Virus record (IMG/VR): IMGVR_UViG_3300020473_000011 | Location: 217,558-281,557 of that record | Length of the DNA: 64,000 nucleotides | Strand: one strand, 5' to 3' | Shown: positions 1,014-30,370 of the stretch, in pieces | Numbering within the stretch: position 1 is the first letter of the stretch | How the letters are laid out: each line of letters starts with the position of its first letter | The notes under the pieces: model-generated | Databases searched by the model: none | What the model was told of the DNA's origin: nothing | What the model saw: the letters and a program-made list of their open reading frames with translations, nothing else | Position numbers and translations under genes: made by a program

Positions 1014-1021
1014 GACTACCC

Positions 1022-1753: not shown

Positions 1754-1820
1754 TGTATTCTCACGCTCAAAAGGAAAGATTAGGGCTGCCTTATTTGCAG
1801 CCCTATACGGTTACTTGGTC

Positions 1821-2600: not shown

Positions 2601-2659
2601 TGCAATACCCTTAAAATGGAAAAGAGGGTTAGCCCCTCTTATAATTTTGAAAAAATGGA

Positions 2660-3439
2660 TTAACGGCCACCAGCCATGTTAAACACCATGCTACGTGAAT
2701 CGTTTGAGTGCGCGCCGTAGTTGATCACAACACGGCCATCATCAAGCTCTTTGGTGTAGTCGACTTTCAGGCGCTTCTCTGCAAACCCTTTGATTTCTTC
2801 CATCGGGTCAAGGCGCATGTCCGTCTTGTTCGGATCGTTCGTCGGCTCGTCGTAGCCCATGTAGTAATCTTGCTTTAGAACAGAGAACTGGCCGTTAGCA
2901 ATAGCCTTCATCATTGCATCTGCATTCCAACGCTTAGGAAGCTTAACAAGACGCTTTAGTTTTGCTGCGTTAAATGGGTTAAAGACTTCTTTAGACTTCT
3001 GCTCGTAGACATGAATATCAACGCGGCCGCTCTCGGTCTCGACGCTGCTTGTTTCAATGTGGTTTACGAAGTCTTCTAATGAACGGTATTCACCACTTGT
3101 CGCCAGCTTGTGAAGGTATTCTGATGTAGGCTCATAGCTGCGAGGAACCGCTGATAGTGAGATTTTCTTACAGGTTTTACCTGCTTTCATACCGTGTTCG
3201 ATGTCCATGATTTCGATTGAACCCATGTACGCGTGAATACGATGCTTACCGTCTTTTGTGTAGATAGTTTGACCGACGCTGATGTCATCAATCTCAGTCA
3301 ATTCTACGTCTTTGATAATAAGCTTTGAGCTTTGCTTTAGAAGGTCAAAACGGCGTTCATTTAGTTCTGCTGATTCGCAGAAATCATGAGCTTCTAACTG
3401 TTCGGTGACAGCTAGAACCTGTGCGATTCTTGTGGTCAT
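2660..3439 (-). CDS. Paralog-family protein (259 aa)
   Basis: DFCESAELNERRF, KLKRLVKLPKRW, AIANGQFSVLKQDYYMGYDEPT. Confidence 0.8.
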   Translation of the reverse strand: MTTRIAQVLAVTEQLEAHDFCESAELNERRFDLLKQSSKLIIKDVELTEIDDISVGQTIYTKDGKHRIHAYMGSIEIMDIEHGMKAGKTCKKISLSAVPRSYEPTSEYLHKLATSGEYRSLEDFVNHIETSSVETESGRVDIHVYEQKSKEVFNPFNAAKLKRLVKLPKRWNADAMMKAIANGQFSVLKQDYYMGYDEPTNDPNKTDMRLDPMEEIKGFAEKRLKVDYTKELDDGRVVINYGAHSNDSRSMVFNMAGGR

Positions 3440-5660: not shown

Positions 5661-5678
5661 CATCGTTGTACAATGATG
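5661..5678. promoter_or_regulatory. Palindromic operator-like site (example of ~29 copies)
   Basis: CATCGTTGTACAATGATG. Confidence 0.7.
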
Positions 5679-5873
5679 TTAAGGCACAAAAGCAACGTCG
5701 GCAGTTTTATCTTCATCGTCGACCAGTGGGACATCGTCTTTCAGGCAAAAACCGTAGTTGCCGTGATTCATAGTCAGGTGATAATCACCTTTCCCCTCAG
5801 CGCTTATTTCCTGCAACATCGCGATAGCTTCGTCCACCGTCATTATTTCTTCGTTTTTGTGAAGATAGGGCAT
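5679..5873 (-). CDS. Small acidic hypothetical protein
   Basis: 64-aa ORF with RBS, flanked by TTGTACAA sites. Confidence 0.55.
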   Translation of the reverse strand: MPYLHKNEEIMTVDEAIAMLQEISAEGKGDYHLTMNHGNYGFCLKDDVPLVDDEDKTADVAFVP

Positions 5874-6002
5874 TTGTTGTTTCCTTTAGGGTCTCGTCAT
5901 TATCACCGTTAGTGTTGCCCGCCAGTTTAGTTGGGATAAACCAGCTAGGCAACACTAATCGTTGTACAATGACTAGAGCGCGCCCCATCAGTGTTGACAG
6001 TT

Positions 6003-6112
6003 TTCTATGGGAATAAATATGGAAACCCTATTGTAATGGGCTTTATCGGGCGTTTTAGGCGTTTTCCATAGGTTTCCATAGAAATGTGTGGTTTTCGTCA
6101 GGATTTTCCATA
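6003..6112. repeat. TTTCCATA repeat cluster (inverted arrangement) downstream of the recombinase operon
   Basis: Minus-strand copies at 6003-6012 (variant) and 6018-6025; plus-strand copies at 6063, 6073, 6105. Confidence 0.75.
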
Positions 6113-6137
6113 AAAAAGCCAGTCGTTGTGACTGGCT
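6112..6137 (-). terminator. Terminator of the recombinase operon
   Basis: AAAAAAGCCAGTC-gttgt-GACTGGCT. Confidence 0.7.
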
Positions 6138-6322
6138 CGTTTACTATTGCTTTTTGGGCTGAGCTAACTTAACGGCTCGTTGTACAATCAAATCGGCTCT
6201 CGATGGGGTCACACCATTGGCTTCCTTTGGCTCTACGCCTTTTATGTGTGAATGACTATCTACCTCCAAGCTGATACCTGTTAGACTGTCTGTCACGTCG
6301 TAAATGCCCTTACTCATACTCT

Positions 6323-6754
6323 CTACCTCAAGGCTACTACATTAGCATGTCTCATCTGTGACTCTAGGTCTGACACCTGACGGCGGCTTACCCATAGCTG
6401 ATAGACTAGGTTAGCCTCGCGTGTCACTGACTTATCCAGTTCGGCTTTGTACTCGTCGCGCTCTTCGCGGTAGCGTTCCTTAGCGCCTTCCTGTTCCTTA
6501 ATATTACTACGATACTTCTCCTTTTGGGTAGGTGTGGCTTGCCCTGCTTTTTGTTTCGCAGCGTTCTTCAAGTCTTTTATACGCTGAATGACGCTAGGGT
6601 AGTGGTAAGCTGTACTTAGGCCAACGCCTGCTTCCTCTTCCACTGCCTTAGCCGATAGCTTCCGTTTAGCTTCCACGCGAATAGGCGTACCGCTCTGTAT
6701 GCGCGTAATCGCGTCAAATAGTTCTCTTTCAGTAGATTCACTCATCTTTACCAC
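6323..6754 (-). CDS. GinD/TnpC-like small HTH + coiled-coil protein
   Basis: LSAKAVEEEAGVGLSTAYHYP helix-turn-helix, then a charged coiled coil; last gene of the recombinase operon. Confidence 0.65.
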   Translation of the reverse strand: MVKMSESTERELFDAITRIQSGTPIRVEAKRKLSAKAVEEEAGVGLSTAYHYPSVIQRIKDLKNAAKQKAGQATPTQKEKYRSNIKEQEGAKERYREERDEYKAELDKSVTREANLVYQLWVSRRQVSDLESQMRHANVVALR

Positions 6755-6758
6755 CTAA

Positions 6759-8834
6759 TTAGTTCGTGAAAGGTTCAAAAGCTACGTTGGCTTTCTGTAG
6801 CATGTGTTCAATCATTTTGATCTGCATCGTGCCTGAGTACATGATCAAGTTACCGCCTGCAAAGTCTTCGGCATTCTTTTGGTCGTCACATAGCTCTTTA
6901 TGAAGGTCTAGTAACAGTTCGAAGCTTTCGTCAGTATAAATCTGGCTGTCGCAATCCATACAAAGAGCAGGGTTGCTCTCATTGTCCATGTTGCACTTGT
7001 AGCCGCTTGAGCAGTAGCCTGCACCTGCCGCATGAATGCTTATCTCGCCTTTCTTGATAAGCTTTTTCAGACCTTCCACTGACTGGTACATTTTGGGCAT
7101 TTTATCACGTGAAGCTACGATGGACTCGCCTTTTTTGCCGTACAAGGGCTTGTCTGTATTATACAAGTTGTCTGCAATTTTAGCCTGCATGTTCAAGCGT
7201 TCATCTAGGATTTGACTAATAAGCTCTAACTGCGACTTACTATCCTTATTCGCGTCAAAGAAACCCGCGAAGGCTGCGTGGTTTGCATAGTGACGCGACA
7301 TGTCTGCACAAAGATGTTTGAACTGTTGCTTTATGGCAGACACCGACGCTAAGTCATGGCGAACTGCAAATACAGCTAAGCTACGGCGCAGTTGATGTAG
7401 CGATAATTGCCATACACTACCAACGAGAATTGGGTCTGATGCCAAAGTTGGATTCAAACGCTTGTACTCTTCTACGTCATCAGCTGTAACGCGGTAGCCG
7501 CACGCGTCGCTCACTGCTTGTGTATACTGGCTATTGTGCGCAGGCAACTCTGTAGGCGGCACACCTGCCCGTTGATTCGCTACCCATAAATGGTCGCGTA
7601 GCGTTTCAATCTCCGCAGCTTTAGGGTGACCTTCATCAATGAATTTTTGGCAACGGCCTTGAATGGGCTTTGCTAAGATAGCCGCAGTTTCTATGGCCTT
7701 TTTAGTGATAGGCGCTGTCACCCAAACATCAGGCGTACCCTGATGTGAGTTAGACATCTTATGTGTTACCGACTTAATCAAAGGGACGTTTGTGTTGTTG
7801 TAATTTGCGATGTAGTAGCTGTCTGGTTTAATCTCATAGGCGTCACTACTGCGCATACCCGTATACGCCACACAGGCCACAAAACAAGTTACTTGCGCTC
7901 TGTTGTAAAGTACTGTGTAAGCACGGAATAACGCATTAGGTGCATTTATCGGTGCTGCAATAGCTTTTAGCTCTTCGTAAAGCTTTGTGCCTTTTAGACC
8001 GTCCTCAATGATAGCGCGTGATTCACGGGGTGTACGACTGTTAATTGCACGCGCCTTAACCTCGACCCCTTTTTCAATACAAGCAGTTACGCCCGCATCA
8101 TAATTCTGGTACAGTTCCGCTTGAACACGTGCTAGCACTGAGGCTTCTGCCCAGTAGCGTTCGATTGAATCGTCTAAGTGATTCAAAAGACTTGCGTAAA
8201 CGTTCGTAGGCAAGGCAGGGTACTGCCTAATTAGCTGCTTATCGTCTGCGCCAATTGCCTTGGCGCTCAACGGGTTTACACCTAGTGTTGGAACGCGAAA
8301 CGGTAATAAGCTCTCTAGGTTCTCTAGGTGCGATAACAGTGCGTTATAGCCACTTATTGATTGGGCTGATAAGTTCTTACTGGCCAAGTGTACTGCTAGG
8401 TTATCAAACACCTGCGTATTGCAAAGGGCTGCAAACGACGAGTGCTGTTCCTTGTCTAAGAAGGATGCCATGCTTTTAGCGTTAGAAAGCAGCCCTGAGA
8501 TAGAACCCGCTTTAAGCAGGCGCGTCGATCCCGCTGGTGCTCGAAGAAACGTGTAGATGATTGACTTAACTTCGGCTCTAAGTGCTGGGTTCTTAATCTT
8601 CTCAAAGCGAAAGATCAGCTTATTTCCATTTTTCAGCGATTTCTGCTGATTCAAGTCCCATATATCATCTGCAAACGTAACTACTTCGCCATTGGGGAAA
8701 GCGGCTACGGTGATGCTCTTTTGCTTGTCGTCACTCAGTGGGCTTTTTAGCTCACCAAGGTTGATAAAATCAACCTTGCCCTCAAAGACTACATTTGCGT
8801 CATCTGTGACGTGAAGCTGTGTGGCTGCACCCAT
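6759..8834 (-). CDS. Large tyrosine recombinase (GinC-like) with C-terminal Cys cluster
   Basis: YTGMRSSD, LHQLRRSLA, QFKHLCADMSRHYA; C-terminal YCSSGYKC...CMDC. Confidence 0.8.
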   Translation of the reverse strand: MGAATQLHVTDDANVVFEGKVDFINLGELKSPLSDDKQKSITVAAFPNGEVVTFADDIWDLNQQKSLKNGNKLIFRFEKIKNPALRAEVKSIIYTFLRAPAGSTRLLKAGSISGLLSNAKSMASFLDKEQHSSFAALCNTQVFDNLAVHLASKNLSAQSISGYNALLSHLENLESLLPFRVPTLGVNPLSAKAIGADDKQLIRQYPALPTNVYASLLNHLDDSIERYWAEASVLARVQAELYQNYDAGVTACIEKGVEVKARAINSRTPRESRAIIEDGLKGTKLYEELKAIAAPINAPNALFRAYTVLYNRAQVTCFVACVAYTGMRSSDAYEIKPDSYYIANYNNTNVPLIKSVTHKMSNSHQGTPDVWVTAPITKKAIETAAILAKPIQGRCQKFIDEGHPKAAEIETLRDHLWVANQRAGVPPTELPAHNSQYTQAVSDACGYRVTADDVEEYKRLNPTLASDPILVGSVWQLSLHQLRRSLAVFAVRHDLASVSAIKQQFKHLCADMSRHYANHAAFAGFFDANKDSKSQLELISQILDERLNMQAKIADNLYNTDKPLYGKKGESIVASRDKMPKMYQSVEGLKKLIKKGEISIHAAGAGYCSSGYKCNMDNESNPALCMDCDSQIYTDESFELLLDLHKELCDDQKNAEDFAGGNLIMYSGTMQIKMIEHMLQKANVAFEPFTN

Positions 8835-8835
8835 C

Positions 8836-10584
8836 CTATACCTCCAAACTTAGTGTAGATTTCGCGTAGGAACGCCAAAATTTGTGGATTCCTTCGCTGA
8901 ACAGCTTAGATTCTGCGGCTTTTACGTTATCTTTAACGAACAAAGCAAGCAGGCTCTCAATTCTTGCCAACAACTTACCCTTTGATTTCTCGAAGTGGTC
9001 GGCATCCTTGTACTTACTTGAAGACGCAAGAACGACTTCTTTGTAAGACAACAATTGGTAGGCATCGTCGATAGTGTCAACTAGCGCATAGTTGCTGCAC
9101 GTTAGGCAGCTATCAAACATCGTACACGGCATTTCCTCAGCACTGGCTAGACCAAGCTTCTCAAGGATAGGCGCATGTTTGCGTTGTGATTTAGTTGGGT
9201 TTGCACCCTCATACGGGTTAGAACAACGACCGCCCGATGGTACAGCCTCATTCTTTTTGTACTTCTGGTTTATGGCATCCAGCGGTAGTAGCTCAATACC
9301 AAGCTCGTCAGCAAGTTCTTGCTTGGCCTCGTCGACCGTCAAACCCTTACCGAGTTTACTTAATACTGTGATGGCTGCGTGTGACTGCTCGTAGTTCTCC
9401 GCTTCGTTACCACTGCCGAGGTAGTGCTCAACTGCGACGCCTGTTGAGTGCCCAGCGTCTTTTGCAGCGGCTACGATACCTGCTGCTCTGGTAGCTGTTT
9501 GGAAACGGTTTTTACGGAAGCGCTCGGCACTAAGCATTAGCTTGGAACCATCGTCAGCCTGTACCTTAAAATGTCTGAATAACATATCAGACACAGCGGT
9601 GATGAAGTTCATCACAGGCTGAACAATCTTGCCGTTGACTTGTAAGAAACTAAATAACTTCCCATCAGCTGCGGGATTATGCTTTGTATTCTCTAACAGT
9701 AGCTCTACCAGTGCTATCTCACGAGGTGTAGACATTAAGCGCGAAACATCATGGTTCGCACGTGCTTTATGCGCATTGATCTCATAGACTGTGCTCGACT
9801 TAGATTTTTTGCGCGTGATACAGTCAATTGTTAGGCTCTGCAATACAGCCGTATTTAGACCTGTGTATAGCGATAAGCGGAACATGCCTAGGGTACTTAA
9901 TAGCCACCAAGCTGTCCCTTTAGCCTCTGGTACGTTATAAGAAAAATTGCGGTCATTAGCCCTCAAACTAAACGTGCTACCGTTAGGGTTGGCTTTCAAT
10001 TGCTTAGACAGCTGGTCGTGCAAGTCACAAACCGCTTTCTTTAGGCAGCGTTGCTCGGTCTGAGAGTAAGCGCGGCGTACCTCACGACCACCACGTTTAA
10101 CAAAAGGCGGCGTGGCTCCTATGATCGGCTTAGGGTCAATACCCGCGACCACCAGTAGCTTCTTGTAAGCTGACCAGTCCCCCCATGCGGTTGATTGCTT
10201 GTAGCGTACCCGAGGGTCACGTACTTTTTGAGTCCAGTACTCAATGACCGCGTTACCACCTTCTGGTGAATCTAGGCTTACTTCTAATTCGTCACTTAGG
10301 GCTGTGAGTTTGCACCAGCGCTTATACGTTGACTTAATAGTGCTTGCGCTATTTGTCGCTGTCGTAACCCATTCCCATAATGCGTTAACGATGTGCTGGC
10401 GTGCTGGCACAAGCTCAGCATGCACGTCGCAATTTAGATGGTAAAGATGTGATACAGCCACTTCGTAATTTTCCCCGCTTGGAAGCGTTACCTTACGCGA
10501 TTGTGCGTGCATTGGTAAAGCCAGCGCTGTAGGCTTACTCGGGGCTTTTAAACTTGATGCACGTGATCGACTAATTCTTCGCAT
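8836..10584 (-). CDS. Degenerate tyrosine-recombinase-fold protein (GinB-like)
   Basis: YTGLNTAVL (catalytic R replaced by N), ERFRKN, AGHSTGVAVEHYL; C-terminal GGRC...CTMFDSCLTC. Confidence 0.7.
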   Translation of the reverse strand: MRRISRSRASSLKAPSKPTALALPMHAQSRKVTLPSGENYEVAVSHLYHLNCDVHAELVPARQHIVNALWEWVTTATNSASTIKSTYKRWCKLTALSDELEVSLDSPEGGNAVIEYWTQKVRDPRVRYKQSTAWGDWSAYKKLLVVAGIDPKPIIGATPPFVKRGGREVRRAYSQTEQRCLKKAVCDLHDQLSKQLKANPNGSTFSLRANDRNFSYNVPEAKGTAWWLLSTLGMFRLSLYTGLNTAVLQSLTIDCITRKKSKSSTVYEINAHKARANHDVSRLMSTPREIALVELLLENTKHNPAADGKLFSFLQVNGKIVQPVMNFITAVSDMLFRHFKVQADDGSKLMLSAERFRKNRFQTATRAAGIVAAAKDAGHSTGVAVEHYLGSGNEAENYEQSHAAITVLSKLGKGLTVDEAKQELADELGIELLPLDAINQKYKKNEAVPSGGRCSNPYEGANPTKSQRKHAPILEKLGLASAEEMPCTMFDSCLTCSNYALVDTIDDAYQLLSYKEVVLASSSKYKDADHFEKSKGKLLARIESLLALFVKDNVKAAESKLFSEGIHKFWRSYAKSTLSLEV

Positions 10585-11842
10585 GACCTTCCCCTAGTAA
10601 AGCTATTTCAAGTTCACGGTCACGAGCCTCAGCGATGTATCGTGCTGCGTCGTTACCATTTACGAAGTCTAGGTAGTCCATTAAGGTTTTAACGTCCTCG
10701 TGACCCATCCAGCGCTGTAGAACACTAAGCGCACTGCCACTGTTCATTGTTTCCAATAGCTCAGATAGGCGGTGTGTTGCATACGTCGAGCGTAAATCGT
10801 GGAATGAATACTCGAATGGGTTTGAGGTTTCGGCGCGTATCAGGTCAACCACGCGACGAAAGCCTTTGTACGCAGCTGACTGACCGAAGCCTAGACCTTT
10901 CTGAGTAATGAATAATGGTATGTTACCGCCGTCAAACGCGTCGCTTGCTTCAAATAGCGCACGGCGCTTCTTGTGTTTCTCTGATGAGCGGTAATCTAAA
11001 AGTTTGTTGTTTAACCAGTCAGGCATTTCGATTGGGCGGTCTTTGTTGCCCTTAGTTTCGTTACCACCTGTACTTAAACCAATCCAGACTTCGTTACCAC
11101 CTGATAGCTTAGCGTCGACTAATTTCTCTGTGTACGTAGCAACTTCGGTAATACGCATGCCTGTAAACAACGACAGCTGAACCATCAATTGAGTTTCTTC
11201 GTTTGCACGTACTAGGTAATCCCCCAATAAGCGTAGGTCTGACAAGGTTAAAGGACGTAGCACACGACCCCCTTGTTTCTTACCACCGACAATACGTAGG
11301 TCAGTACTATCAACCACAATTTTCTTAGTGGCCATCGTATCGCTTTTAAGGTTGTGGGTGAGTGATTCACAGCGGAATGGGGCGCGGCGTTGGTCATATT
11401 CGAATACGCCCTCATACAGCGCCCATTTGTAAAAACTCACGACAACATTCATGTAGCTTTTAGCTGTAGACGCAGCTAACGTACCGCCATCAACGGCAGC
11501 TTGCAGCGTATCTCTGAAAACGTAAGTAGGGCGCGTAGACGGCGTCGTACCAAACGTAAACCAATCAAAGTTGTTAATCTCTAAGAATCGGCAGTAGAAG
11601 AGTAAAGCTGTAGCTGTACTAGATAAACTCTTTAGGTTCTTACGCAGCTTACGGTCGAAGAAGTACATCACCGCCTCTTGAACGATTTCACCTTCTCCAT
11701 TGAATAAAACTGGGAACCTATCAATCGTACGTGATACCTCATCGCTGAACACGGCCAACAGTTCGCCAGCGTCTTCTGTGATCTCAACCGATTTATGCAA
11801 CGGCATATCGGTAATCCAATGTAGGTAAGCTTCTTGTGTCAT
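10571..11842 (-). CDS. Tyrosine recombinase/integrase (GinA-like)
   Basis: FTGMRITEV, TKGNKDR, FHDLRSTYA, WMGHEDVKTLMDYL: complete R-K-H-R-H-Y set. Confidence 0.92.
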   Translation of the reverse strand: MTQEAYLHWITDMPLHKSVEITEDAGELLAVFSDEVSRTIDRFPVLFNGEGEIVQEAVMYFFDRKLRKNLKSLSSTATALLFYCRFLEINNFDWFTFGTTPSTRPTYVFRDTLQAAVDGGTLAASTAKSYMNVVVSFYKWALYEGVFEYDQRRAPFRCESLTHNLKSDTMATKKIVVDSTDLRIVGGKKQGGRVLRPLTLSDLRLLGDYLVRANEETQLMVQLSLFTGMRITEVATYTEKLVDAKLSGGNEVWIGLSTGGNETKGNKDRPIEMPDWLNNKLLDYRSSEKHKKRRALFEASDAFDGGNIPLFITQKGLGFGQSAAYKGFRRVVDLIRAETSNPFEYSFHDLRSTYATHRLSELLETMNSGSALSVLQRWMGHEDVKTLMDYLDFVNGNDAARYIAEARDRELEIALLGEGHAKN

Positions 11843-12966
11843 ACTACTGCTGCCTTTTTAAAGTCGTCTAGTGTCCAAGTATCAAAGTAGCCTTCGTTAC
11901 CGTCACCCTCACAGGCCGCATAGGCCATCTGGCCGTAGCCATAACAGTTGAACTCACAATTAACGAGGTCGGCACTATCGGCAAGGTCAGTGTGTGTTTT
12001 ACGGTCGTATTCTTCCATGCCCATTGCTTGGATGGGGCACTCTTCGTCACAGCCTTCTGGCGTTATTAAATGGTTATCTTTTACGTAGGTTTCCATGACG
12101 CGTTGCGTGGCGTCGCCGAAGACTCCCGCTACGAACTCTTCGCGCGTTTCAGTACGCATACCGCTGCCTGATTCAAAGGTTGGAACGTCTAAGCCTGTGT
12201 TAGATTCGAAGAACTCAAGGTACGTCGTTATGTTGTCTTTTAGCGGCTCACCTGTACGCTTGGCGTAAGTCGATTTGTCGTAACCTGTGTCACGAAAGTC
12301 GCTCTCTACGTACTCAGCGCCTGACCATTCTTTAATAACGGCGAGTATAAATTTTTGACGGAAGCCGTCTTTGTTTTCGGGATCGACGTACTTAGTAAGG
12401 ATTGCGTGCAGCTCGTCGAAATGGTCTGCCGTGACTTCAATAGGCTGCTCACTTGCTGCTTGAAAGTCGTTGAATGTCCAGTCTTGAAAGTCAGCATTCT
12501 CAACAAAGCTATCCCGTAGGGCAGTGCCTAGTTGCGTGTAGCCCACAAAAATTGACTCTAACGCTAATTCTTCGGCATCTGTTTCAGCTTCGGCTCCCAT
12601 AATGTACTTGTGAGCTTCTTCGTGATTTAAAGGACGCTTTTTGTCGTATGACATGCCCAAAAAGTTTTTACGCACATAGTGCTGAACAAAGCTACTCGTT
12701 AGTGAATGTAGGAACTGGTAGACCGCCTCGTCGTAGCGTAGGTACTGACGGCATAGGTCTGTGAGATATACGTCGGGACGTACGTCACTTTCCATTAAGC
12801 ATAGTTCTTTGAATGTCGTAGCATCGTCGGCATCTGGCCATACTTCTGTAACGTAGCTAACAAACTTTTGGAATGCGAAGCCTTTCTTACCTGTTTCGTA
12901 AAACTTAGCTAGTCCAGCTTCTATCTTTTCTAAATCTTCTAACGTAACGACTCTTAACGTGGTCAT
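11839..12966 (-). CDS. Acidic hypothetical protein (375 aa) coupled to the integrase
   Basis: ATGA overlap with the integrase start; AGGA-free but clean long ORF. Confidence 0.7.
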   Translation of the reverse strand: MTTLRVVTLEDLEKIEAGLAKFYETGKKGFAFQKFVSYVTEVWPDADDATTFKELCLMESDVRPDVYLTDLCRQYLRYDEAVYQFLHSLTSSFVQHYVRKNFLGMSYDKKRPLNHEEAHKYIMGAEAETDAEELALESIFVGYTQLGTALRDSFVENADFQDWTFNDFQAASEQPIEVTADHFDELHAILTKYVDPENKDGFRQKFILAVIKEWSGAEYVESDFRDTGYDKSTYAKRTGEPLKDNITTYLEFFESNTGLDVPTFESGSGMRTETREEFVAGVFGDATQRVMETYVKDNHLITPEGCDEECPIQAMGMEEYDRKTHTDLADSADLVNCEFNCYGYGQMAYAACEGDGNEGYFDTWTLDDFKKAAVV

Positions 12967-13002
12967 AGGAATACTCTAAAGCTACATCAATAACTTTATT
13001 AT

Positions 13003-13051
13003 ATTCCATACTTTCCATAATTACAATAAGGCTACATTACTTTCCATAGAA
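13003..13051 (+). repeat. TTTCCATA repeat cluster upstream of the recombinase operon
   Basis: ATTCCATA 13003, TTTCCATA 13012, ATTACAATA 13020, TTTCCATAGAA 13041. Confidence 0.7.
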
Positions 13052-16000
13052 TTAGGCTAGGTTACCCCATATAACGTACCCGTATTCGGTATCTCCCAGC
13101 GTATAACGGCGATATAGCCAGCTACCGTCATCAGGGTCTCTGTACAGGATAGGCTCAACCACACCGTTTCGTATTGCCTCGATCATAGCTGCACGTGGTG
13201 AGTAAGTTCCTCGTGCTGTTCCGTTTTGCACTTTCTCGATCAACTCTTCACGGTACTTAGTACGCAAGTCACGTAACCACTGCATCAGGTCAATCTGAAC
13301 GATACCTGCCTTATAGCGTCGGAAGTCCTCACTTCGGAACTTAATAGGCAAGTTAACATCAACCCTGTCATGGAACGGCAATGGCTTCATAAGTGAGTAG
13401 TCGATGCTATCAAGCACAGTGGCCATATCAACAGCATACTCTACAAACAGGTCATCAGACTTAGCCACGGCCGCTTGCTTATAGCGGTCAATAATATCGA
13501 ACGTTGGAAGAATATTACCGACTAGCTTCGCGTAGTCAGCCGTGTCCATCGGCTTCATCATACGGTAGTGCATGTTCGCAACAGGGTCACTGAGCAGGTA
13601 CTGCTCGTAAGCTTGGCCAACGGCATTCACCATATCTTGGTAACTCGCGTACTTAGAGTGCAGCACGCCACCTGCTTCGGCACCTGTTGCCTGTGCGTAC
13701 GCTTCATCAATACGCGCGTCACTCAAGCCCATTGCCTTCAATGAACTGTAGAGCGAAGCAAGACCTTGCTCGTACTGCTCGTACAGACGGTCTAAGCGTT
13801 TTGCACTCACAGACTCTTGGTCATACTCGTCGTACAACGCAGTGTCACCTAGGTTAGACTGATCGAACTTATTGTAGCTCTCCGTGTCGCCTAGCCCTGC
13901 TTGTGCTACATCGGCGAATAGCTCGCCTTGCCCTAGCTGATACTGTTTCAGGCGCATGTAGTGTGCCTTTGACACCTCTTTTGCTTGTGCAAAGAACATA
14001 TCAGCTTGTGTAACGCTTAACCCAGCTTGCAGTAGTGCATTGTAGATTTCAGGCGCAACCAAGTCAGACTGTACTAGCTTGTTGTAAATAGCGCTGTCGC
14101 TTTCCAGTGATTGCTTGTAGCTCTGGTATGAGTCTGTTGTCTCTGCCAGCGCTTGACGCATAGCATGGTAGAACTCCGTCATACTCTCAGGCTTTTGTGC
14201 ATACCACTGATTACCAAACCAGTTCTCGCGCATGACCTTAACGACCTCGTCGTGCTCTTTCTCAGACAAGGCGACCTTTTGTTGTTTGAAGTCCCAGTGG
14301 TCGATAGCCACTTCGGTCAAGTTTGCGACCCACTTCTGGTATAGCTGACTTTCGCTCGGCGCAGCAAGTCTCTCAAAATCAAGACTATCAGCCAGCTTTG
14401 TGATCGTCTTGCGTAGCACAATCTCAATCTTCTTCGCGATACTCGACACATTCTGTGGATTAATACGCTTCATATCTGTAATGCGTATATCCGACGATGA
14501 TACCTTGTCCCGCAACCCGATTGGTCGGTCGTTCAACAGACTGTAGCCACGGCCATCACGTCGCATCGCTATCCAAAAGTCGGTCGACACTATATCGCGT
14601 ATTGGTACATACGCCTTGTTGGCTGCATGACCCAGTGGCACACCCACTGGGAGTGATAAGCTATAGGCCGTTGACGTTGGACGTACATGCGGTGTAAAGC
14701 GCTTTTTAATGTCCGTCTTTGTCGCCATTTCTGACGTCAGTGTTTGATAGAACTTAGTGTGTGTTGCGTAACGGCTTTCACTTAGCTGGTGGTAGCCCGT
14801 ACCACTAAATACTTCGCTGTAGTTGTCCAGCTGTTCAAAATGGATCGCGTTAGAGAATACGTCGAACGGTGACCACTTCGTGTAGGTCACATCAGCATTA
14901 ACATACTCTGACTCTATGCGGATAAAATCTTTATTCACGTAGTCATGCGCTTGTGCATTACGCAAGCGTATTACATCGGTAATTTTCACGTCTGGACGCG
15001 TCCGTACATCTTGGTCATACCGACGGTTCACGTCGACAGCTGAGACCTCAAGCTGCACCGAGTGGATAATACGACTTAACGTATGTTGGTCGTAGCGCTG
15101 TGTCCATTTTGGTAAACGGTAGTTCTCCACAAATGTTCGGGTAGGGATGACCCAGCGGTCAGTCTCAACCGTAACAGGTATACGTTGACCCATCGCACTT
15201 TGTTTGTACAGTACGGATGAACCCACGCCTTTTATTTGGTCGAGCATCTTAACCCACGCACTACCTACAATGCTGATTGATGGCGCTGTCGGCATCATAA
15301 CTTGATGGTAGCGTGCGCCCTGCATCATTGGTGCCGCATGCTGCTGAGGTTTGACCCATTGCTCACCCGTCATACGCACAGCTGTGCTGGTGGTCGGATT
15401 AACCTGCTTAGTCAGAATATCTTGTGACAAACTCAATGAGTCCGTTTTCTTCTTGATAAGCTCAAGCTCTTGGGTTCCCATTATCTGGTCTGTACTTGCA
15501 CGGTACGGCGACTGTATATGACTGCGCCCTAAGCTCTGCGAGATATGACCGTAGTCTTGCAACCAGTTCGGCAGCCCATAAGGGAACGTATGGCGGAATT
15601 TAGGGAACCAGTACTCAGCCTTTTGAGACAGCGTACTTCTAAAGCCCGTCAGTGAATCGAACTTAACTTCTTGTAGGTTAAGACTCGCCTTAGCAACTTT
15701 CATTTCAATACTTTTCAGACGCATAGAGTCTGCTTGCGACCACGGGGTCAGCTCTATTCGCTGAGTTACATAGCGCGTCAGTGCCTTTCGGCCATTGATG
15801 AGCTGTAGTGACCCCGATACATGGAAATCACTCTTAGTCATCGTCAGTGCAAACGGCTGGAACTTCGACATGTATGTCGTGCTCATGAATTTACCGTCAC
15901 GTGGCTTATAACCCTTCACGGTCTTAACGCGCATGTGTCGCCCAAGTGCATCAGTCACACTCGGGATCTTCATGTGCTTGTAATGCTCCGTCGTTGCTTT

Positions 16001-19000
16001 CTCCATCTGAGCACCTGCCATCGCTAAGTGGAAGTCCGTTGCTTTTGCAAGGTCAACCGCTGCAAACTTTGGATTAAACCCACGCAGTACTTCAAGTGCT
16101 ACATCAGTCAGGACAGGATTCTCGGCATAGCCTTCCTTCACGGCCATCGTTTCGTGCAAGTTGATCAGGGGCTGCATTACTTTTGAGTGTGCGTCGGCTA
16201 AGCGTATCGTCGTTCCAAACACTTCACTTGTCGTGTCAATTTTTGGCACGTTGTCCATCGTGATCTTAATCAATTCGACGGCAGTCTCCATCGTGTTGAT
16301 TTGCAGCTTAGTGCCCGTAACATCAGCTAAATACTTAGCCCAGCGCATAACAACCGACTCGACATGCTTCATTGCAAGGCTGTGCGGTTCCATCACAAGC
16401 ATAGCAACGTCGTTCATGATGGCATTGTATGAGGTTTCCGATTGCATTAGCACATCATTCATCGCCTTGATTTGACTACCTGCAATATTAAAGTTAGCCA
16501 CTTCTGGTAACTGCTCTACAAAGTTGTCCATCAGCCTCATGTGAGTTGTTTGAAGTCCTGCTATCTCCATTGAAGACTCTTTACTCAGCGTCACCTTATT
16601 TTGCAGCGCACGTTGTGCAAGTCTATTTAGTAATACAGCCTGTTCAAGTATAGTAAGAGCATCTTGGTTTTGGTAGTTAACGCCAATTTCTTTCGTGAGC
16701 TGACGGTCGCGAACAAGCAGCAAGCGCTCGCCTAAGTGTGCTGCATAGCTCGTTAGGCTCGCCAGCGACACATTGTTTAGCTCTGTACGAATGTGACCAC
16801 CACGCGTTAGTTTTGCACTGCCCTGTAGCTCAGTTGTTTTGACTGTGCTTAACGGCAAACCATCCTCATAATGCGTCTGGCCACCTGCAACGCGTGTGTA
16901 CAACAAGCCATCGGCCGTCGTGTCTTGTGACATTACGACGGTAGACGCGACGCCGTGCTCAATCGCTTGTCGTAGCGTCTGGTACTCGACAGTTGTCTCG
17001 ACTAAATTTGACGCATAGTCAGTGCCTGCCACGACTGAGGCATCGCTACTTAGGCGCGACGTACGCTGAACGGCCGAAGTTTCAATACGGTCTACCCAAT
17101 AGCGCACCGATGGCTCTGACGTTAGTGTGACCGCCTTAACGTGTTTACGGTTAAGGTCATGACCTTGACGGTGATAGATGTCCTGCTGTGTGCTACTAAG
17201 TTTAGACGTAACCAGCTGTGTACCAACTTGCACATTAGTCCATGATGCTTTCGTAAATGGCAGCTCTTCGCGGTGTGCTGATATTGAATCGGCCGTAACC
17301 AGCTTAATTAGCTCATCAATCGTAATACCGACTTTATCTAGCTTGAAGTTAACTAAGTCAGAGAGCACGCGGCTATTCTTGTCGACCTTAGTGAAGACAC
17401 CTTTTGGTATGGCTTTCAGTTGGCTAAACGCCCAATCGACTAGATTAGACTTTACAGCTTTAAGCCAGTCATTCGTATTGTAGGCGACTGCCTCAGCCTC
17501 AATATTGCTAACAGCATCGCGGCCAATCAGCACCGCATTTATCTGTGTTGAGGTATTTGATTTAGTCTCAAAATCAACACCATTCAATACACGCGTAATC
17601 CCTGAGTCTATGGCTAGTTGGGCACTGTCCATTAAAGTTGTGGATGCGTGCAGGGCAGTGTCTAGTGTCTGTGTGTTCTTTGGCGAAATTGCTTGCGAGC
17701 GTATCAGTTTCACAAGGTCTTGGTAGTACGTTGACCCCGAAATCACGTCCATACCCACAGGTTGTGGGAACATCGGCACGCCAGCTCTTTGAACATCAAA
17801 GTTACTTGCTGTTAGTGAATAGTTCTCGACCTCTATGATACGCAGGTCTACCTTGTTCTCTACGCGGGTGAATGGCTGTAGCGTGAACGCCTGACCCTTA
17901 ACAAGTTCAGCACCTGTCTTAGCGCCACGCGCCACAAGCGTTGACGACTTACTCGTGCCTAGGAAGCCCTGCACGCGCAGTGGTACCGTGCTAAAGCGGT
18001 TAATGGAAGTCTGCGCCATGTAGTATTCTAGAACGCTCTCAGCCTCACTACGGGCTTCGGTAAGGCGCAGAGGAACCACATTAAGTGACACCTTCGTTTC
18101 ACCCATAGCAAAAGGTACTGCGTCCATAAAGCCACTACGGCTCTTTTCAACAGTGAACGTTAAGCGGTCAGTCCTTGTGCTCATACCACTGACTTTATGC
18201 AGTTGCAGCGTATTCTCTTTGGTTGACGCTTTGTGCTTCCCGAATGGGATCAGGCGTGCTTCACTTGAGAACAGATAGCCCATCTTATTTAGGTCTATCG
18301 TTGTGGCGAACTTCTTAATCGTGTGGTTAACGTAACCTAGCCCTTTTGCTTGCGCTAAGGTTGAGCGGTGTACACGGCTGGGTATTTTTAACCCATCGCT
18401 ATAATTCCACGCCGATCCTGATTGCATTTCAAAGGGTACAACCTGTGCTTGTGCTACACGATTGCCCGTGCCCACATCAAACGCTGCGCGCTGCCACTTG
18501 TAGGCTGCATCACGGAAAAGTCGCAGGGCGACTGTCGAGATAAAACCGCTTTGACTGTTCAGTGTAAAGGTGACATCGTCGTCAGCGACTGACGACCGAG
18601 CTAACGCATTGTATAACAGCTCAATTGTGCTTGAGAATGCGTTACTCTCGCGTGCATCATAGCTTACCGTTTCAGGTAGACTGCTTGTAAGGTACGCTGC
18701 CGTTAAAAACTTGACTAGTTCCGCCGCAGGGACATCCTGATCGTCTCTAACGAGATTGATTATGTCTGTCCCAGCGGTGCTCAAGCGTGACATTAAGTAG
18801 CTCACGTCCTCGGCACTATCAGACGACAACAATGCCCGTGTGAAGCGTACTTTATCGACCCCCGAGTCAATTGACCAATTGCTCAGTACTTCGTAAAAAA
18901 GCTCAGCTACGTCACTTGTTCCTTTTGCTTGAGAAAAGACCAGCTTTTGTGCAGCTGGCATATTGCCGCCATTATCCAGACGGGTATTAATCCCCACCAC

Positions 19001-22000
19001 ATCATTTGAGGTGCCCACAGGCTTAGGCACTAGCGGATCAGTCGGTGCTGATGTTCGTGGTGCATTACGGCCATTCATAGGGTCGGCCGCCGCAGAGGTC
19101 GGAAACCCTCTGTTAGCCAGTATCGCATCGGCCATCGACGCTGTTGTGCTGCCTACTAAGTTGAAATTGAAGGATAGCGGGGCTTCCATCATGATGCGGT
19201 CAAGCGCATAACGTATAGCATACTTTAGCTCTTGTAATGCGTTTTGATTCGTCACTATATAGCGTAGTGTGTCGGCTATATGCGATTTAGTAGCACTTAC
19301 CTTGAAGAGCTGAACCAAGTGGTTTGACGCATGAAGCGACAAGGCACTTGTTGGCGCATAGCCAAGTGCGTCGGGTGCCGTGAAAGTATAGAGCTGCACA
19401 GGGTACGCCAGCATAGGCTCCGCGTATTGCATGCCACGACCTGTCACCGTCATGTTAACGTGCTTAGCGTCTCTCATGCGGTTAGCCGTCACTTGTAGGG
19501 CACTCATCGGCGCGCCTACCTTTGAGGTTAGGTGGCTTAGCTCTGCCATGGTCAGCTTTGTCGAGGCAAATGCGCGGTTGCTTTCTACGTACGAAGCTAA
19601 CCAGCGGTCTATTTTATCTTTCCCAGACCAGACACTACGTGTGGCATACGTACTATCAAAACCAGCTAGCGGTGCTTTAACACGCCATGATTTAATAACT
19701 TGTGAAAGTCCCAGTCTGTTCGTCTTAGTGAATGCCGAGCGTAGAGCCTCTAGCACGGTTTCCCCATGCGAAGAGGCTGACGAGGTGCCCTTTGTATCAC
19801 CTTGAAAGTCTGAACTACGGTGGAGTGATGCAAGCACTGTGTCATACCCCATCGCGATATGACGGCGAGCATGCGTGTAGTACTGCTGGTCGTAACCTAA
19901 TACCTCTTTTCGCTGGTATTGGCCAGCCACAAAAAGGCCATCAAAGGCTTGAAAGGGTACCTGATAGCGAATACCCCTCATATCTTCGTCAGCAATAGAG
20001 ATTGCACGCTTATCGCCTGTGAATAAAGCTGCTTGAGTCATGCTCTTTCGTGACGGGTAGGCCGCGCCGTATGACGCATTAGCACCCTCGTGGATAGACC
20101 TCGATACAAACGTAAAAGTCCATGTCTTGTAGGCAAGTCTACCCGCCAGCGTATTCAGTCCAATAAAGTACTGAACATCCGAATACGTCATCACGTTATG
20201 ATAAGTACGTGATGCAATTGTTCGATTGGTTTCACCGTTAGACAGTGCGCGACTGTAGTCAATATCTTGTGAAAAGCTGGTGCCTCGTTGCATTCCCTCA
20301 GAGTTAAGTAACTGGCGCTGAGCCGAGCGACTGTAGAGCATCATCATGCGCATGAACGGATCAGCCGTTGCTGCTTGCGTACCATGTATACCTGTTTTTG
20401 TGCTGTAACCCGAACGTGAAGTAAATTGACGCGCTAGGTAGGCGTGAGCCGTGTTTGCCCAGTTCCGAATGCTTGTCTGCTGGATCTCAAACTTAAAGTT
20501 ACCCACGGACAAGTCAACGTTCGACCTTAATAGCTTGTAGGACGCATCCATCGTGCGCACTGTTACGGTACTACCCAAGGCGTAGTTATGTTTGTTCGCA
20601 TGGTGTGCTGAACTACTTTGCATTACACGTGCTGAGTTATCATTTGTTTCATGGGATGTCTGGTAAAGGCCAACCATTGCATTTGTGTTCGTACTCGCAC
20701 GCGTAGACGGGGCGGAGATACCCACACGTTGAGGCTTAGCCTTGTAGTTGTCCCAAAAACCAGTCGTTAGCCTGACGTGGCGAACTTGGTCAACAGCGAA
20801 GCTTGGGATCTCAGGCGTCTTGTTCAAATCAGACGTCGACAGGTAGCATCGTATTTGATAACCCGTAAGTGTTCCATCTGCTGGTAACTGCTGTGGCTCG
20901 TTAGAGTATTCGGTGTACTTAGTTGTTAAAGACGATTGGTCACGATACTGTAGGCGGAACTCCGTAAGTACCGAGGTGCCCGTCGGTATGACTGAATACA
21001 ACGACGGTTCAACGCTCTGAATAACACGAAGAGACTCTACCTTAATGACATCAGATTCAAAGCTACCCACCCAGAAGCCACTCGCTTCCACAGGGTCTGA
21101 TAGAAATAGGCGCTTTTGGCCATCGCTATCATACTGGAAGTCTGTGCCTTTCATTTCACCGTGAATGTCATCATGTAACGCTACTTCATCAACAGGCTCG
21201 TAGACTTCGACTCGGCTCCTGAAATGAAGGCCATCCATCACGTTGTACTGACGCTCAAGTCGCAATTCTTCATCAGTTACCCATGCAACCTGCGTGCTTG
21301 ACTCCGTACCTTCGCTATCGGTAACAACCAATGTGCTGCCGTCACTAACAACCAATAATGGGTCACCGTCATGCCCTAGTGAAAAAGATTGGCTCTCGTA
21401 GTGCTCGCCCACAAGGCAATCACTAACACTCGGTAGATTAAAATAATCCGCCTTTTCTTCAAATAATATAACGGTCTCTGGTTGCTCACTATTAACTGCA
21501 CCGTTAGTCTTCTCAATAGACTGGATGACCGTTGAGACCTCTGCACCATCAGGCTCGCTGATGGCGACCATCGTCACGACATAATTACCATGCCATGTGC
21601 TGTAGTAACCTTTGCGCTGCACGACGATTGGGTCTTCGTTTAGGGTCTCTGATTCTACGCTGTATAAATCAACAAGTAGCGAGCTGGCAAGGTCTAAGCA
21701 GTAAACTTCACCCGTAACCCGTGCCGAGAAAACAACTAAAGAATTGTGAGCGTAAGCATGACCCACCTCGAAAGGAAGGGGCACCTCTTCAACGGTAAAC
21801 TCGTCAAATGAAATAAAGTAAACAGCCGTCGTTGATACCGCAACAATGCTACGAGAATAACCAAGCCACATTACGTGGTTTATATCGGCAACACCCTCTA
21901 CGTAACGAAATGGCGCAAAGACAAGGCAGCCATCAGGATCTTGCTGTACATAGAATACATCAATATGATTGCGAGTATTTCCTACCACCCACAACAGGTC

Positions 22001-23817: not shown

Positions 23818-23831
23818 TGTCTCACCTCAAC

Positions 23832-25748: not shown

Positions 25749-25936
25749 TGCTCATTTCCTCGTTACTTTAGTCTCAGCACCATTGATACGGCGATACTGC
25801 AATCTCAGGTGTAGTTATGATTGTACAACGGATGTGCAGGCGTTGTACAACGGAGACTATAAAAAACTTACAAGAAGCAACCTAGGGAAAAACTGCACAC
25901 TAGGCCACTTCGTCAATTAATACCTTAAAACGTTCT

Positions 25937-27283: not shown

Positions 27284-27297
27284 TAGTCAGCCCCTTC

Positions 27298-28638: not shown

Positions 28639-28720
28639 AAGTTGTTAACTCCGTCACATCGGCAGCCATTGCTGCGATTAAAAGCCCAGTTACATGTCCG
28701 CGACGAGCGCGGTCTAGCAC

Positions 28721-28732
28721 CATTGTACAATG
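28721..28732. promoter_or_regulatory. Palindromic operator-like site
   Basis: Perfect CATTGTACAATG, paired with a second core at 28757. Confidence 0.7.
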
Positions 28733-28776
28733 AATGTGCAGAGTATTACAGTTTCATTGTACAACCATTGATGCCG

Positions 28777-29673: not shown

Positions 29674-29681
29674 GCTCTGCC

Positions 29682-30338: not shown

Positions 30339-30370
30339 TATCACAGTCTCACTTTAGTTGTTGTTTAAGG

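What the first reader, a model, noticed from the sequence alone, without database searches (positions are those of the whole stretch)
6323..12966. GInt-like four-gene triple-recombinase operon inside a jumbo-phage genome
Seen: intact integrase (423 aa), degenerate recombinase lacking the first Arg (582 aa), large recombinase with intact motifs (691 aa) and a small HTH protein (143 aa), all tightly coupled. Established: GInts are genomic islands defined by ginABCD, three tyrosine recombinases plus a small gene, described from bacterial chromosomes. Inference: either a GInt has hopped into a phage, or a very large phage uses this multi-subunit machine as its own integrase (a temperate jumbo phage).
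Basis: partly seen in the sequence, partly recalled or inferred. Interest (0 to 1): 0.75.

Follow-up and report, generated by a model that had tools for sequence, protein, structure and literature searches.

The report
Mobile SE element inside giant phage
The four-gene recombinase block is a 7.1-kb mobile element of the SE family (strand-biased circularizing integrative elements, so far known only from bacterial chromosomes and plasmids), inserted at the tail end of a giant gene of a ~420-kb marine phage; near-identical phages in other samples lack it exactly, so it is a hitch-hiker and not the phage's own integrase.

Summary
The ORFs are real and tightly coupled. IntA (423 aa) and IntB (691 aa) keep the full R-K-H-R-H-Y tyrosine-recombinase set. 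The 582-aa protein has a recombinase fold with the first Arg replaced by an invariant Asn.

The family is SE, not GInt. [quoted passage not shown] None matches E. coli GinA-D (best E 3.7).

The decisive evidence is an empty site. Two NCBI assemblies and contigs of two further sequencing runs carry the same phage locus without the block. Their flanks are about 99.9% identical to the window next to the site.

These define a 7,076-bp element, window 5989-13064, minus strand. It is bounded by a 6-bp direct repeat ATGGGG and sits 9 bp before the stop of a 3,108-aa phage gene.

Besides the core it carries a 375-aa gene placed ahead of intA, a 57-aa ORF, its own promoter and terminator, subterminal inverted repeats and clustered TATGGAA boxes at both ends.

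So "a mobile element hopped into a phage" is supported. "The phage's own integrase" is not. No Tfp homologue was found in 50,697 GenBank phage records, and no IntB relative in IMG/VR.

The parts
5989..13064 (-). The whole mobile element, 7,076 bp: everything present in the window but absent from empty-site variants of the same phage.
   Evidence: BLASTN of the empty locus L092 against the occupied locus L093. In runs X15 and X16 the contigs stop matching at window 13065 and continue with the sequence of window 5953-5982.
13065..13070 (-). attL copy of the 6-bp core ATGGGG. It falls inside the last codons of the giant phage gene.
   Evidence: Junction comparison of attB, attL and attR.
5983..5988 (-). 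attR copy of the 6-bp core ATGGGG.
   Evidence: The same attR junction is seen in four independent ENA assemblies.
13020..13051 (-). Left subterminal inverted repeat. It starts 13 bp in from the element end and contains the first TATGGAAAG box.
   Evidence: Local alignment of the left end with the reverse complement of the right end gives 27 matches over 32-35 bp. This score was reached by 37 of 2000 shuffles and 19 of 3000 genome segment pairs (pair I22, 102, 128).
6003..6037 (-). Right subterminal inverted repeat. It starts 14 bp in from the element end and contains two inverted boxes.
13004..13048 (-). Three direct TATGGAA boxes at the left end. They overlap the promoter and are presumed recombinase or accessory-protein binding sites.
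   Evidence: Seven TATGGAA boxes lie in 200 bp of the element ends, against 32 in the whole 281.6-kb record and none in the rest of the element; Poisson P about 6e-16.
6003..6112 (-). Three direct and two inverted boxes of the TATGG(A/G)AA type at the right end.
12998..13026 (-). Sigma-70-type promoter TTGTAA-17-TATAAT inside the left end. It is the only minus-strand promoter-like site in 5800-13300.
   Evidence: a consensus match only. Published SEs also place the operon promoter in the left end (PMC10214605).
11839..12966 (-). U375, a 375-aa cargo gene of unknown function. It is a tandem duplicate of a ~200-aa domain, lies between the left end and intA, and overlaps intA by 4 bp.
   Evidence: It has no homologue in any of about 70 bacterial SE loci. 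None of 54 bacterial loci has an ORF abutting intA. Its C-terminal half has 32 homologues of ~200-220 aa and unknown function. The internal repeat is family D11. It is absent from empty-site phages.
10571..11842 (-). intA: an ordinary-sized tyrosine recombinase with the full catalytic set R230 K264 H348 R351 H381 Y390.
   Evidence: Pfam PF00589 at 7e-11 and phrog_1 at 9e-29. BLASTP gives 34% identity and 3e-55 to bacterial SE IntA. Alignment A4.
8836..10584 (-). tfp: a protein with a tyrosine-recombinase fold and a degenerate active site (Asn244 in place of the first Arg). It also has a C-terminal Cys cluster C454/C487/C493/C496.
   Evidence: It is homologous to SE Tfp, including WP_015068672.1, which is listed as Tfp in the supplement of PMC10214605. 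The AlphaFold model (pLDDT 69.7) has XerA, Cre and XerH as its best PDB matches, E 1.4e-5. Alignments A3 and A5.
6759..8834 (-). intB: a large tyrosine recombinase with R328 K359 H480 R483 H507 Y516 and a C-terminal Cys cluster.
   Evidence: TBLASTN and BLASTP reach 1e-72 against SE IntB. Alignments A1 and A8. The AlphaFold model (pLDDT 75) matches Cre and XerH.
6323..6754 (-). srap: a small accessory protein with a conserved N-terminal motif (LSxKAVEEEAG) followed by a coiled coil.
   Evidence: BLASTP gives 38% identity and 4e-22 to bacterial Srap, and 1e-12 and 5e-11 to Srap of published SEs. Alignment A6.
6144..6317 (-). orf57, a 57-aa ORF of unknown function that lies in the element downstream of srap. 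It contains one copy of the phage-wide motif ATTGTACAACGA (6177-6188).
   Evidence: Called as a gene. Absent from empty-site loci. No Pfam match. Motif count.
6116..6138 (-). Intrinsic terminator-like hairpin followed by a T-run, closing the element's transcription unit.
13052..22378 (-). Target gene: a 3,108-aa phage ORF of unknown function lying next to five tail-sheath paralogues. The insertion is 9 bp before its original stop and changes the C-terminus from ...WGAL to ...WGNLA.

Best explanation
[quoted passage not shown] This copy has inserted site-specifically into a ~420-kb marine jumbo phage.

Shown:
- The element is 7,076 bp and is flanked by the hexamer ATGGGG on both sides.
- It sits in the last codons of a 3,108-aa phage gene and supplies a new four-residue end and stop codon.
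- Natural populations hold both the occupied and the exactly empty form of the same phage.
- The element encodes IntA, Tfp, IntB and Srap in the SE order.
- It has a promoter in the left end and a terminator near the right end.
- It has subterminal inverted repeats and TATGGAA boxes clustered only at its two ends.

Inferred from the experimental work on SE-6283 and SE-6945 (PMC9345347, PMC10214605):
- IntA and IntB carry out strand cleavage and exchange.
- Tfp (recombinase fold, no first Arg) and Srap act as non-catalytic, essential assembly or DNA-binding partners, probably on the TATGGAA boxes.
- attL x attR recombination gives a circular copy with the two ends joined across a 6-bp spacer.
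- That circle integrates into an attB that shares the hexamer.

In the SE model the hexamer next to the right end is carried over from the previous donor site. Here it equals the attB hexamer. That fits spread between copies of the same phage locus, for example during co-infection, but ordinary conservative exchange over a 6-bp overlap would give the same picture.

The 375-aa gene ahead of intA and the 57-aa ORF are cargo of unknown function.
For: Family and gene order:
- All four proteins have BLASTP homologues in the order IntA-Tfp-IntB-Srap in 56 complete loci of Vibrio, Shewanella, Alteromonas, Aeromonas and others.
- They also match published SEs: SE-Pda04Ya311, SE-PaeBT2436 and the pAMDE1 block listed in the paper's supplement.
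- The IntB tree puts the window protein inside the span of published SEs.

Catalytic pattern:
- It matches SE: IntA and IntB are intact and Tfp is degenerate.

Empty sites:
- L092 (GCA_024232155.1) and L094 (GCA_024449935.1).
- Contigs of runs X15 and X16 leave the window at exactly 13065 and continue with the right flank.
- X15-X18 hold 0.89-0.98 of the flanking gene's sampled words but only 0.05 of those of the block stretch.

Occupied form:
- It is seen in several independent samples (X1, X2, X3; ENA assemblies).

Flank identity:
- 1 mismatch in 2,809 bp on the left and 2 in the first 4 kb on the right.

Ends and transcription unit:
- Inverted repeats, boxes, promoter and terminator.

RNA:
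- Metatranscriptome contigs lie on U375, intA, tfp and intB. This is weak evidence because DNA carry-over is not excluded.
Against: - No circular junction, second insertion site or bacterial copy of this element was found, so current activity is inferred only from the presence/absence polymorphism.
- The outermost 13-14 bp of the two ends are not similar to each other, and they do not end in the ...GTA / TAC... seen in the published termini.
- The inverted repeat is only moderately above chance.
- The nearest bacterial relatives are 28-38% identical, so the donor is unknown.
- The element's GC content and tetranucleotide make-up are those of the phage. That could mean long residence in the phage lineage rather than a recent hop.
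- In experiments SEs do not leave empty sites, so the empty forms are read here as never-occupied. Precise excision cannot be excluded.
Confidence: 0.85

Rival explanations
1. It is a GInt: a ginABCD island as defined by Bardaji et al. 2017.
For: There is a superficial likeness. Both have three recombinase-like genes plus one small gene in one operon, and one of the three lacks the first Arg.
Against: The degenerate protein is second here, not third. The sizes differ: 423/582/691/143 aa against 400/434/624/128 aa in E. coli IAI1. No BLASTP hit to GinA-D is better than E 3.7, while every protein hits its SE counterpart. The flanking repeat is 6 bp, not 10-11 nt.
Confidence: 0.03
2. It is the phage's own multi-subunit integration module, which would make this a temperate jumbo phage.
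For: The block has the phage's base composition. It contains one copy of a phage-wide regulatory-looking motif. No close bacterial copy is known.
Against: Near-identical phages lack the whole block at a precise 6-bp junction. The inverted repeats and box clusters bracket only the 7 kb. No contig joins the region to bacterial DNA. The phage record has other solitary tyrosine-recombinase genes that could serve such roles.
Confidence: 0.04
3. It is a one-off historical insertion that is now immobile. Occupied and empty lineages simply coexist, and the genes are on their way to decay.
For: Only one insertion site is known and no circle junction was found. The composition is fully phage-like.
Against: All six ORFs are intact, and every invariant catalytic residue of the family is kept. 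The flanks of occupied and empty forms are ~99.9% identical next to the site, so the event is recent. RNA-library contigs cover the operon.
Confidence: 0.1
4. It is an assembly chimera between a phage and a bacterial contig.
For: None beyond the general risk in metagenome assemblies.
Against: The same junctions appear in assemblies of several samples and pipelines, and the contigs run up to 419.5 kb. Run X2 covers the block with 100%-identical pieces.
Confidence: 0.01

Closest known systems
Strand-biased circularizing integrative elements (SE-6283/Tn6283, SE-6945, SE-Pda04Ya311, SE-PaeBT2436, the SE core block on pAMDE1; Nonaka 2022 PMC9345347, Idola 2023 PMC10214605)
   Same: The four core genes are in the same order and of the same sizes. 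Every core protein shows sequence homology to its counterpart. IntA and IntB are catalytic and Tfp is degenerate. The genes overlap or abut in the operon, and the promoter lies in the left end. The ends carry imperfect inverted repeats. The crossover unit is 6 bp. The total size, 7.1 kb, is close to the smallest SEs (6.4-7.3 kb). The insertion is site-specific.
   Different: It resides in a phage genome, not a chromosome or plasmid. Identity to any bacterial SE protein is only 23-38%, and IntB sits on a long, unresolved branch. A cargo gene sits between the left end and intA and is coupled to it, which was seen in 0 of 54 bacterial loci. The inverted repeats are longer and start 13-14 bp in from the ends, and the tips lack the ...GTA/TAC... 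pattern. GC content equals that of the carrier rather than being lower. Strand bias and copy-out are untested.
GInts (ginABCD; Bardaji 2017, PMC5385486)
   Same: Both have three recombinase-fold proteins plus one small protein in one operon. In GInts all four are needed for recombination. One protein lacks the first Arg. Both form a circular intermediate with a ~6-nt staggered exchange.
   Different: The position of the degenerate protein differs (third in GInts, second here). The protein sizes differ. There is no detectable sequence similarity. GInts are flanked by 10-11-nt repeats and have an AT-rich 3' end.
Tn554 family (TnpA, TnpB, TnpC)
   Same: [quoted passage not shown] Both leave a 6-bp footprint and show target specificity (as summarised in PMC10214605).
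   Different: Tn554 has no Tfp counterpart and lives in Firmicutes. It was not compared by sequence here.
GMT islands (GmtY, GmtZ, GmtX; bioRxiv 10.1101/2023.03.28.534373) and RIT elements
   Same: They are multi-recombinase mobile modules of Gammaproteobacteria (GMT) or of diverse bacteria (RIT).
   Different: GMT has three genes. Its second protein carries a Phage_Integr_2 domain and its third is StbA-like. RITs have three catalytic recombinases and no small gene. Neither pattern fits this block.

Membership tests
SE (strand-biased circularizing integrative element) | Four core genes intA-tfp-intB-srap on one strand, in this order, as an operon. | tested here: met
   ORF layout. The same order with all four BLASTP matches is found in 56 bacterial loci.
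SE (strand-biased circularizing integrative element) | Tfp and Srap are homologous to the SE-specific Tfp and Srap families; the tfp-srap synteny block was used to define SEs. | tested here: met
   Tfp against pAMDE1 WP_015068672.1, which is listed in Additional file 3 of PMC10214605: 1e-13 by TBLASTN and 3e-21 by BLASTP. Srap: 1e-12 and 5e-11 to published SEs.
SE (strand-biased circularizing integrative element) | IntA and IntB carry the RHRY motif. Tfp has a recombinase fold but lacks the complete motif. | tested here: met
   Alignments A1, A3, A4 and A8. Fold searches. In Tfp the first Arg is Asn244, matched to IntA by eye. The Lys, second Arg and Tyr positions are retained, which is a milder loss than 'lacks RHRY'.
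SE (strand-biased circularizing integrative element) | Imperfect terminal inverted repeats C and C' of 13-19 bp that abut the 6-bp spacer. | tested here: inconclusive
   A 32-35-bp imperfect inverted repeat exists but starts 13-14 bp in from each end. The tips are dissimilar and lack the GTA/TAC ends of the published examples. Chance level is about 0.6-2%.
SE (strand-biased circularizing integrative element) | 6-bp crossover or spacer unit at the junctions and site-specific insertion. | tested here: met
   ATGGGG is present once in attB and on both sides of the element. Only one site was seen in all assemblies searched.
SE (strand-biased circularizing integrative element) | attL x attR recombination gives a circle from one preferred strand and leaves no empty donor site (copy-out). 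| not testable with these tools
   The public runs are held only as contigs, and the laid stretch could not span both ends. This needs PCR or raw reads.
SE (strand-biased circularizing integrative element) | Hosts are Gammaproteobacteria. | tested here: inconclusive
   The carrier is a phage of unknown host. Nearly all of the nearest isolated relatives of its tail sheath infect gammaproteobacteria such as Erwinia, Dickeya, Pseudomonas and Yersinia. Nearly all bacterial relatives of the core genes are marine gammaproteobacteria.
GInt | ginA and ginB are catalytic, the third protein GinC lacks the first Arg, and the small GinD comes last. | tested here: not met
   Here the second protein is the degenerate one and the third is fully catalytic. 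The GInt layout was read from E. coli IAI1 and from PMC5385486.
GInt | Sequence similarity to GinA-D. | tested here: not met
   BLASTP against E. coli IAI1 GinA-D gave nothing better than E 3.7.
GMT island | A trio of GmtY (tyrosine recombinase), GmtZ (Phage_Integr_2 domain) and GmtX (StbA-like). | tested here: not met
   There are four core genes here, not three. No Phage_Integr_2 or other Pfam hit appears on the second or third protein. There was no direct sequence comparison.
RIT element | Three consecutive catalytic tyrosine recombinases and no fourth small gene (from the description in PMC10214605 and general knowledge). | tested here: not met
   The middle protein lacks the first Arg and a conserved fourth gene is present. 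There was no direct sequence comparison.

The most novel reading that the evidence does not exclude
This is a phage-adapted SE lineage. On this reading the element spreads from genome to genome of co-infecting giant phages at one fixed site, much as a homing element does. Three observations fit this: the identical hexamer at both junctions, the phage-like composition, and a phage regulatory motif inside the element. The element would then use the virion as its vehicle between cells. That would answer how 'non-mobilizable' SEs travel. Its unusual leading gene, U375, would be a phage-directed or selfish cargo.
Probability: 0.3. Interest if true: 0.78.

Novelty: new member of a known kind. Interest (0 to 1): 0.62.

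Why it matters
SEs were described only in 2018-2023. They have been reported only from chromosomes and plasmids of Gammaproteobacteria, are thought to lack any transfer function of their own, and carry resistance and defence genes. Transposable elements are generally reported as poorly tolerated in phage genomes (PMC3429520).

A complete SE in a ~420-kb phage extends the known carriers of this family to viruses. Natural occupied and empty alleles come with it. It offers a candidate vehicle for movement between cells.

It also gives, without any experiment, a clean attB/attL/attR triplet for a very divergent family member. That triplet can be used to test the copy-out model and the roles of Tfp and Srap.

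It further shows that very large phage genomes can host autonomous integrative elements in the way a chromosome does.

Tried and rejected
- Pfam, NCBIfam and PHROGs gave nothing for the 582-aa and 691-aa proteins.
- The word-indexed protein search found almost no relatives. TBLASTN on plasmids and a pattern scan of genomes did find them.
- Profile searches of PDB sequences with the Tfp, IntB and Srap alignments gave only noise or coiled coils.
- hhalign of the Tfp profile against the IntA and IntB profiles was not significant. The residue correspondence for Tfp therefore rests on the local motif match and on the fold search.
- A scan for an attS-like palindrome around a 5-8-bp spacer near the block found only terminators.
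- Repeat finding alone could not set the borders: 395 inverted pairs were found in 16 kb. Only the empty site did that.
- Scans of IMG/VR with the giant gene's C-terminus, with IntB, with the IntB profile, with the left end and with the attB junction all found nothing.
- The metagenome scan with the left end found only a 281-kb contig that looks like another copy of the window's own genome; its flank was not checked.
- The GenBank phage set has no Tfp or U375 homologue and only two weak partial IntB-like hits.
- pSEA1 and pSEA2, the plasmids that carry SE-6283 and SE-6945, are not in the held plasmid collection. SE-Pda04Ya311 and SE-PaeBT2436 were used instead.
- U375 gave no usable lead from the protein atlas. 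The gene contexts of two of its homologues were uninformative.
It was re-sent with permitted rows only.
- No protein-complex prediction was run.
Full report
**1. Observation**

The window is the last 64 kb of a 281,557-bp IMG/VR virus record. Other assemblies carry the same genes on contigs of up to 419.5 kb.

The minus strand holds five abutting ORFs between 6323 and 12966: 375, 423, 582, 691 and 143 aa. Their sizes, coordinates and coupling are as stated.

Only the 423-aa protein is recognised by Pfam, NCBIfam or PHROGs as an integrase. Alignments with homologues show the following.
- The 423-aa protein has R230, K264, H348, R351, H381 and Y390.
- The 691-aa protein has R328, K359, H480, R483, H507 and Y516, plus a conserved Cys cluster.
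- The 582-aa protein has an invariant Asn244 in the motif YTGLN, where IntA has FTGMR. It keeps K273, R357 and Y388.

AlphaFold models of the 582-aa and 691-aa proteins (pLDDT 69.7 and 75.0) both have Cre, XerA and XerH as their best solved matches. The HTH claimed for the 143-aa protein is not demonstrated. It has a conserved N-terminal motif and a coiled coil.

**2. Which family**

TBLASTN against plasmids found both large proteins side by side in many gammaproteobacterial plasmids. In each case they sit between a ~400-aa integrase gene and a ~145-aa gene.

One of these loci is on Alteromonas plasmid pAMDE1. Its genes are listed as tfp and srap orthologues in the supplement of the paper that defines strand-biased circularizing integrative elements, or SEs (PMC10214605).

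A pattern scan of one genome per species gave 204 IntB relatives, of which 80 loci were kept. With the window's proteins as BLASTP queries, 56 loci show IntA-Tfp-IntB-Srap in that order. The best values were:

| Protein | Best identity | Best E-value |
|---|---|---|
| IntA | 34% | 3e-55 |
| Tfp | 26-28% | 1e-31 |
| IntB | 30% | 1e-72 |
| Srap | 38% | 4e-22 |

Against SEs with published termini (SE-Pda04Ya311, SE-PaeBT2436), every protein hits its counterpart. Against GinA-D of the GInt in E. coli IAI1, nothing scores better than E 3.7.

GInts also differ in layout. Their third protein is the degenerate one, and the sizes are 400/434/624/128 aa. GMT, RIT and Tn554 layouts do not fit either.

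In an IntB tree the window protein is a long branch. It is unresolved at the base of the large marine clade, within the span covered by the published SEs. Its identity to any other row is at most 28%.

**3. Borders and mobility**

Sequence features alone did not fix the ends. Two searches of public sequencing runs did better.
- Runs X1-X3 hold the block.
- Runs X15-X18 hold 0.89-0.98 of the sampled words of the neighbouring giant gene, but only 0.05 of those of the stretch containing the block.

An exact-protein look-up of the 64-aa gene downstream then returned a 147-kb NCBI contig (L092). In it the giant gene is followed after 99 bp by that 64-aa gene. Alignment of the empty and occupied loci gave the junctions:
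- attB reads ...GTTAT ATGGGG CGCGCT...
- attL reads ...GTTAT ATGGGG TAACC...
- attR reads ...CACTG ATGGGG CGCGCT...

The element is therefore window 5989-13064, which is 7,076 bp, with ATGGGG on both sides.

Further evidence for both states:
- A second NCBI assembly has the same empty site, and four ENA assemblies have the same attR.
- Contigs of X15 (61 kb) and X16 (19.7 kb), laid on the window, stop matching at exactly 13065. They continue with the sequence of window 5953-5982.
- Run X2, an independent sample, covers the block with identical pieces.
- A metatranscriptome (X4) has contigs on U375, intA, tfp and intB.

Next to the site, the occupied and empty phages differ by 1 base in 2.8 kb on the left and 2 bases in 4 kb on the right. 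The insertion lies 9 bp before the stop of the 3,108-aa gene and changes its end from ...WGAL to ...WGNLA.

**4. Anatomy of the element**

In order, on the coding strand:
- 13 bp of tip sequence.
- A 32-bp arm of an imperfect inverted repeat.
- A promoter, TTGTAA-17-TATAAT, overlapped by three TATGGAA boxes.
- U375, intA, tfp, intB, srap and orf57.
- A terminator.
- Three direct boxes and two inverted boxes.
- The other repeat arm, then 14 bp of tip sequence.

The boxes are strongly concentrated at the ends. Seven lie in 200 bp of the ends, none in the rest of the element, and 32 in the whole record (P about 6e-16). The inverted repeat is moderately above chance.

U375 has no counterpart in any bacterial SE locus. 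No bacterial locus has an ORF abutting intA, in 0 of 54 examined. U375 is a tandem duplicate of a ~200-aa domain that occurs alone in 32 other proteins of unknown function.

The element's GC content (46.7%) and tetranucleotide make-up are typical of the phage. Published SEs are usually lower in GC than their hosts.

**5. Setting**

The record is a phage.
- It has five tail-sheath paralogues, an endolysin or transglycosylase, a DNA polymerase, a helicase and a tRNA nucleotidyltransferase.
- The nearest isolated relatives of its sheath protein are 250-310-kb phages of Erwinia, Dickeya, Pseudomonas and Yersinia.
- There is no other copy of the SE genes in the record.
- Two unrelated solitary tyrosine-recombinase genes lie elsewhere in it.

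No Tfp homologue is present in 50,697 GenBank phage records, where IntB gave only two weak partial hits. No confirmed IntB relative is present in IMG/VR. The held literature has no report of an SE in a phage.

**6. Mechanism**

Shown here: a recent, precise, site-specific gain (or loss) of a self-contained 7.1-kb unit with SE core genes.

Inferred from SE experiments:
- IntA and IntB do the chemistry.
- Tfp and Srap are essential non-catalytic partners.
- The ends are joined into a circle across a 6-bp spacer.
- The circle integrates at an attB.

In the SE model the hexamer beside the right end comes from the previous donor site. Here it equals the target hexamer. This fits transfer between copies of the same phage locus, but it does not prove it.

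Strand bias, copy-out and the binding role of the boxes are untested.

**7. Verdict**

It is a mobile element that has entered a giant phage. But it belongs to the SE family, not the GInts, and it is not the phage's own integrase.

It is a new and very divergent member of a known kind, in a setting not reported before.

Noticed in passing
Whole record. In the window: 3500, 5663-5674, 5959-5970, 6177-6188, 51918 and others.: The 12-mer ATTGTACAACGA occurs 31 times and its core TTGTACAACG 84 times in 281.6 kb, against 0.03 and 0.5 expected. From inspection of the listing, copies appear mostly intergenic and oriented with the genes, often just after a GC-rich hairpin and before an AT-rich stretch. 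This looks like a phage-specific promoter or regulatory signal. One copy lies 14 bp downstream of the attB core and another lies inside the element's orf57.
   Followed up: partly
window 22597-31450: Five paralogous tail-sheath genes (phrog_12249) lie in a row, just upstream of the 3,108-aa gene that has no family match.
   Followed up: partly
window 315-3439 (ORFs of 232, 243, 259 and 259 aa): This is a tandem family of paralogous genes with an ~840-bp repeat spacing. Almost all differences between the occupied and empty phage variants fall in this area (15-78 mismatches per 500 bp at 4.5-7 kb right of the site, about 0 elsewhere). It looks like a hypervariable cassette.
   Followed up: partly
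G000:C1:60691-61722 (minus) and G000:C1:6553-8454 (plus), outside the window: There are two further solitary tyrosine-recombinase genes in the phage record. One is 343 aa (PF00589, 2e-28). The other is 633 aa with a weak match (1.4e-5, below the cut-off). Neither is related by BLAST to the SE proteins. They might be a dimer resolvase or the phage's own integrase.
   Followed up: partly
window 11839-12966: U375 is an internal tandem duplication. The nucleotide repeat is at 11857-11888 and 12460-12491, 603 nt apart. The duplicated unit is an acidic, Cys-containing ~200-aa domain whose single-domain relatives occur in unannotated metagenome contigs.
   Followed up: partly
locus L089 15023-15253 and 20196-20627; window 50476-51828: The phage encodes homologues of ArfA (ribosome rescue), CheW and a tRNA nucleotidyltransferase. 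These are host-like functions, as would be expected in a very large phage.
   Followed up: no
plasmid loci L004, L006, L007, L008: Bacterial SE relatives on plasmids carry defence- or conflict-type cargo directly after srap: SIR2, a TrlF-like ATPase, and SpvB/RHS toxin genes. The phage copy carries no recognisable cargo of that kind.
   Followed up: no
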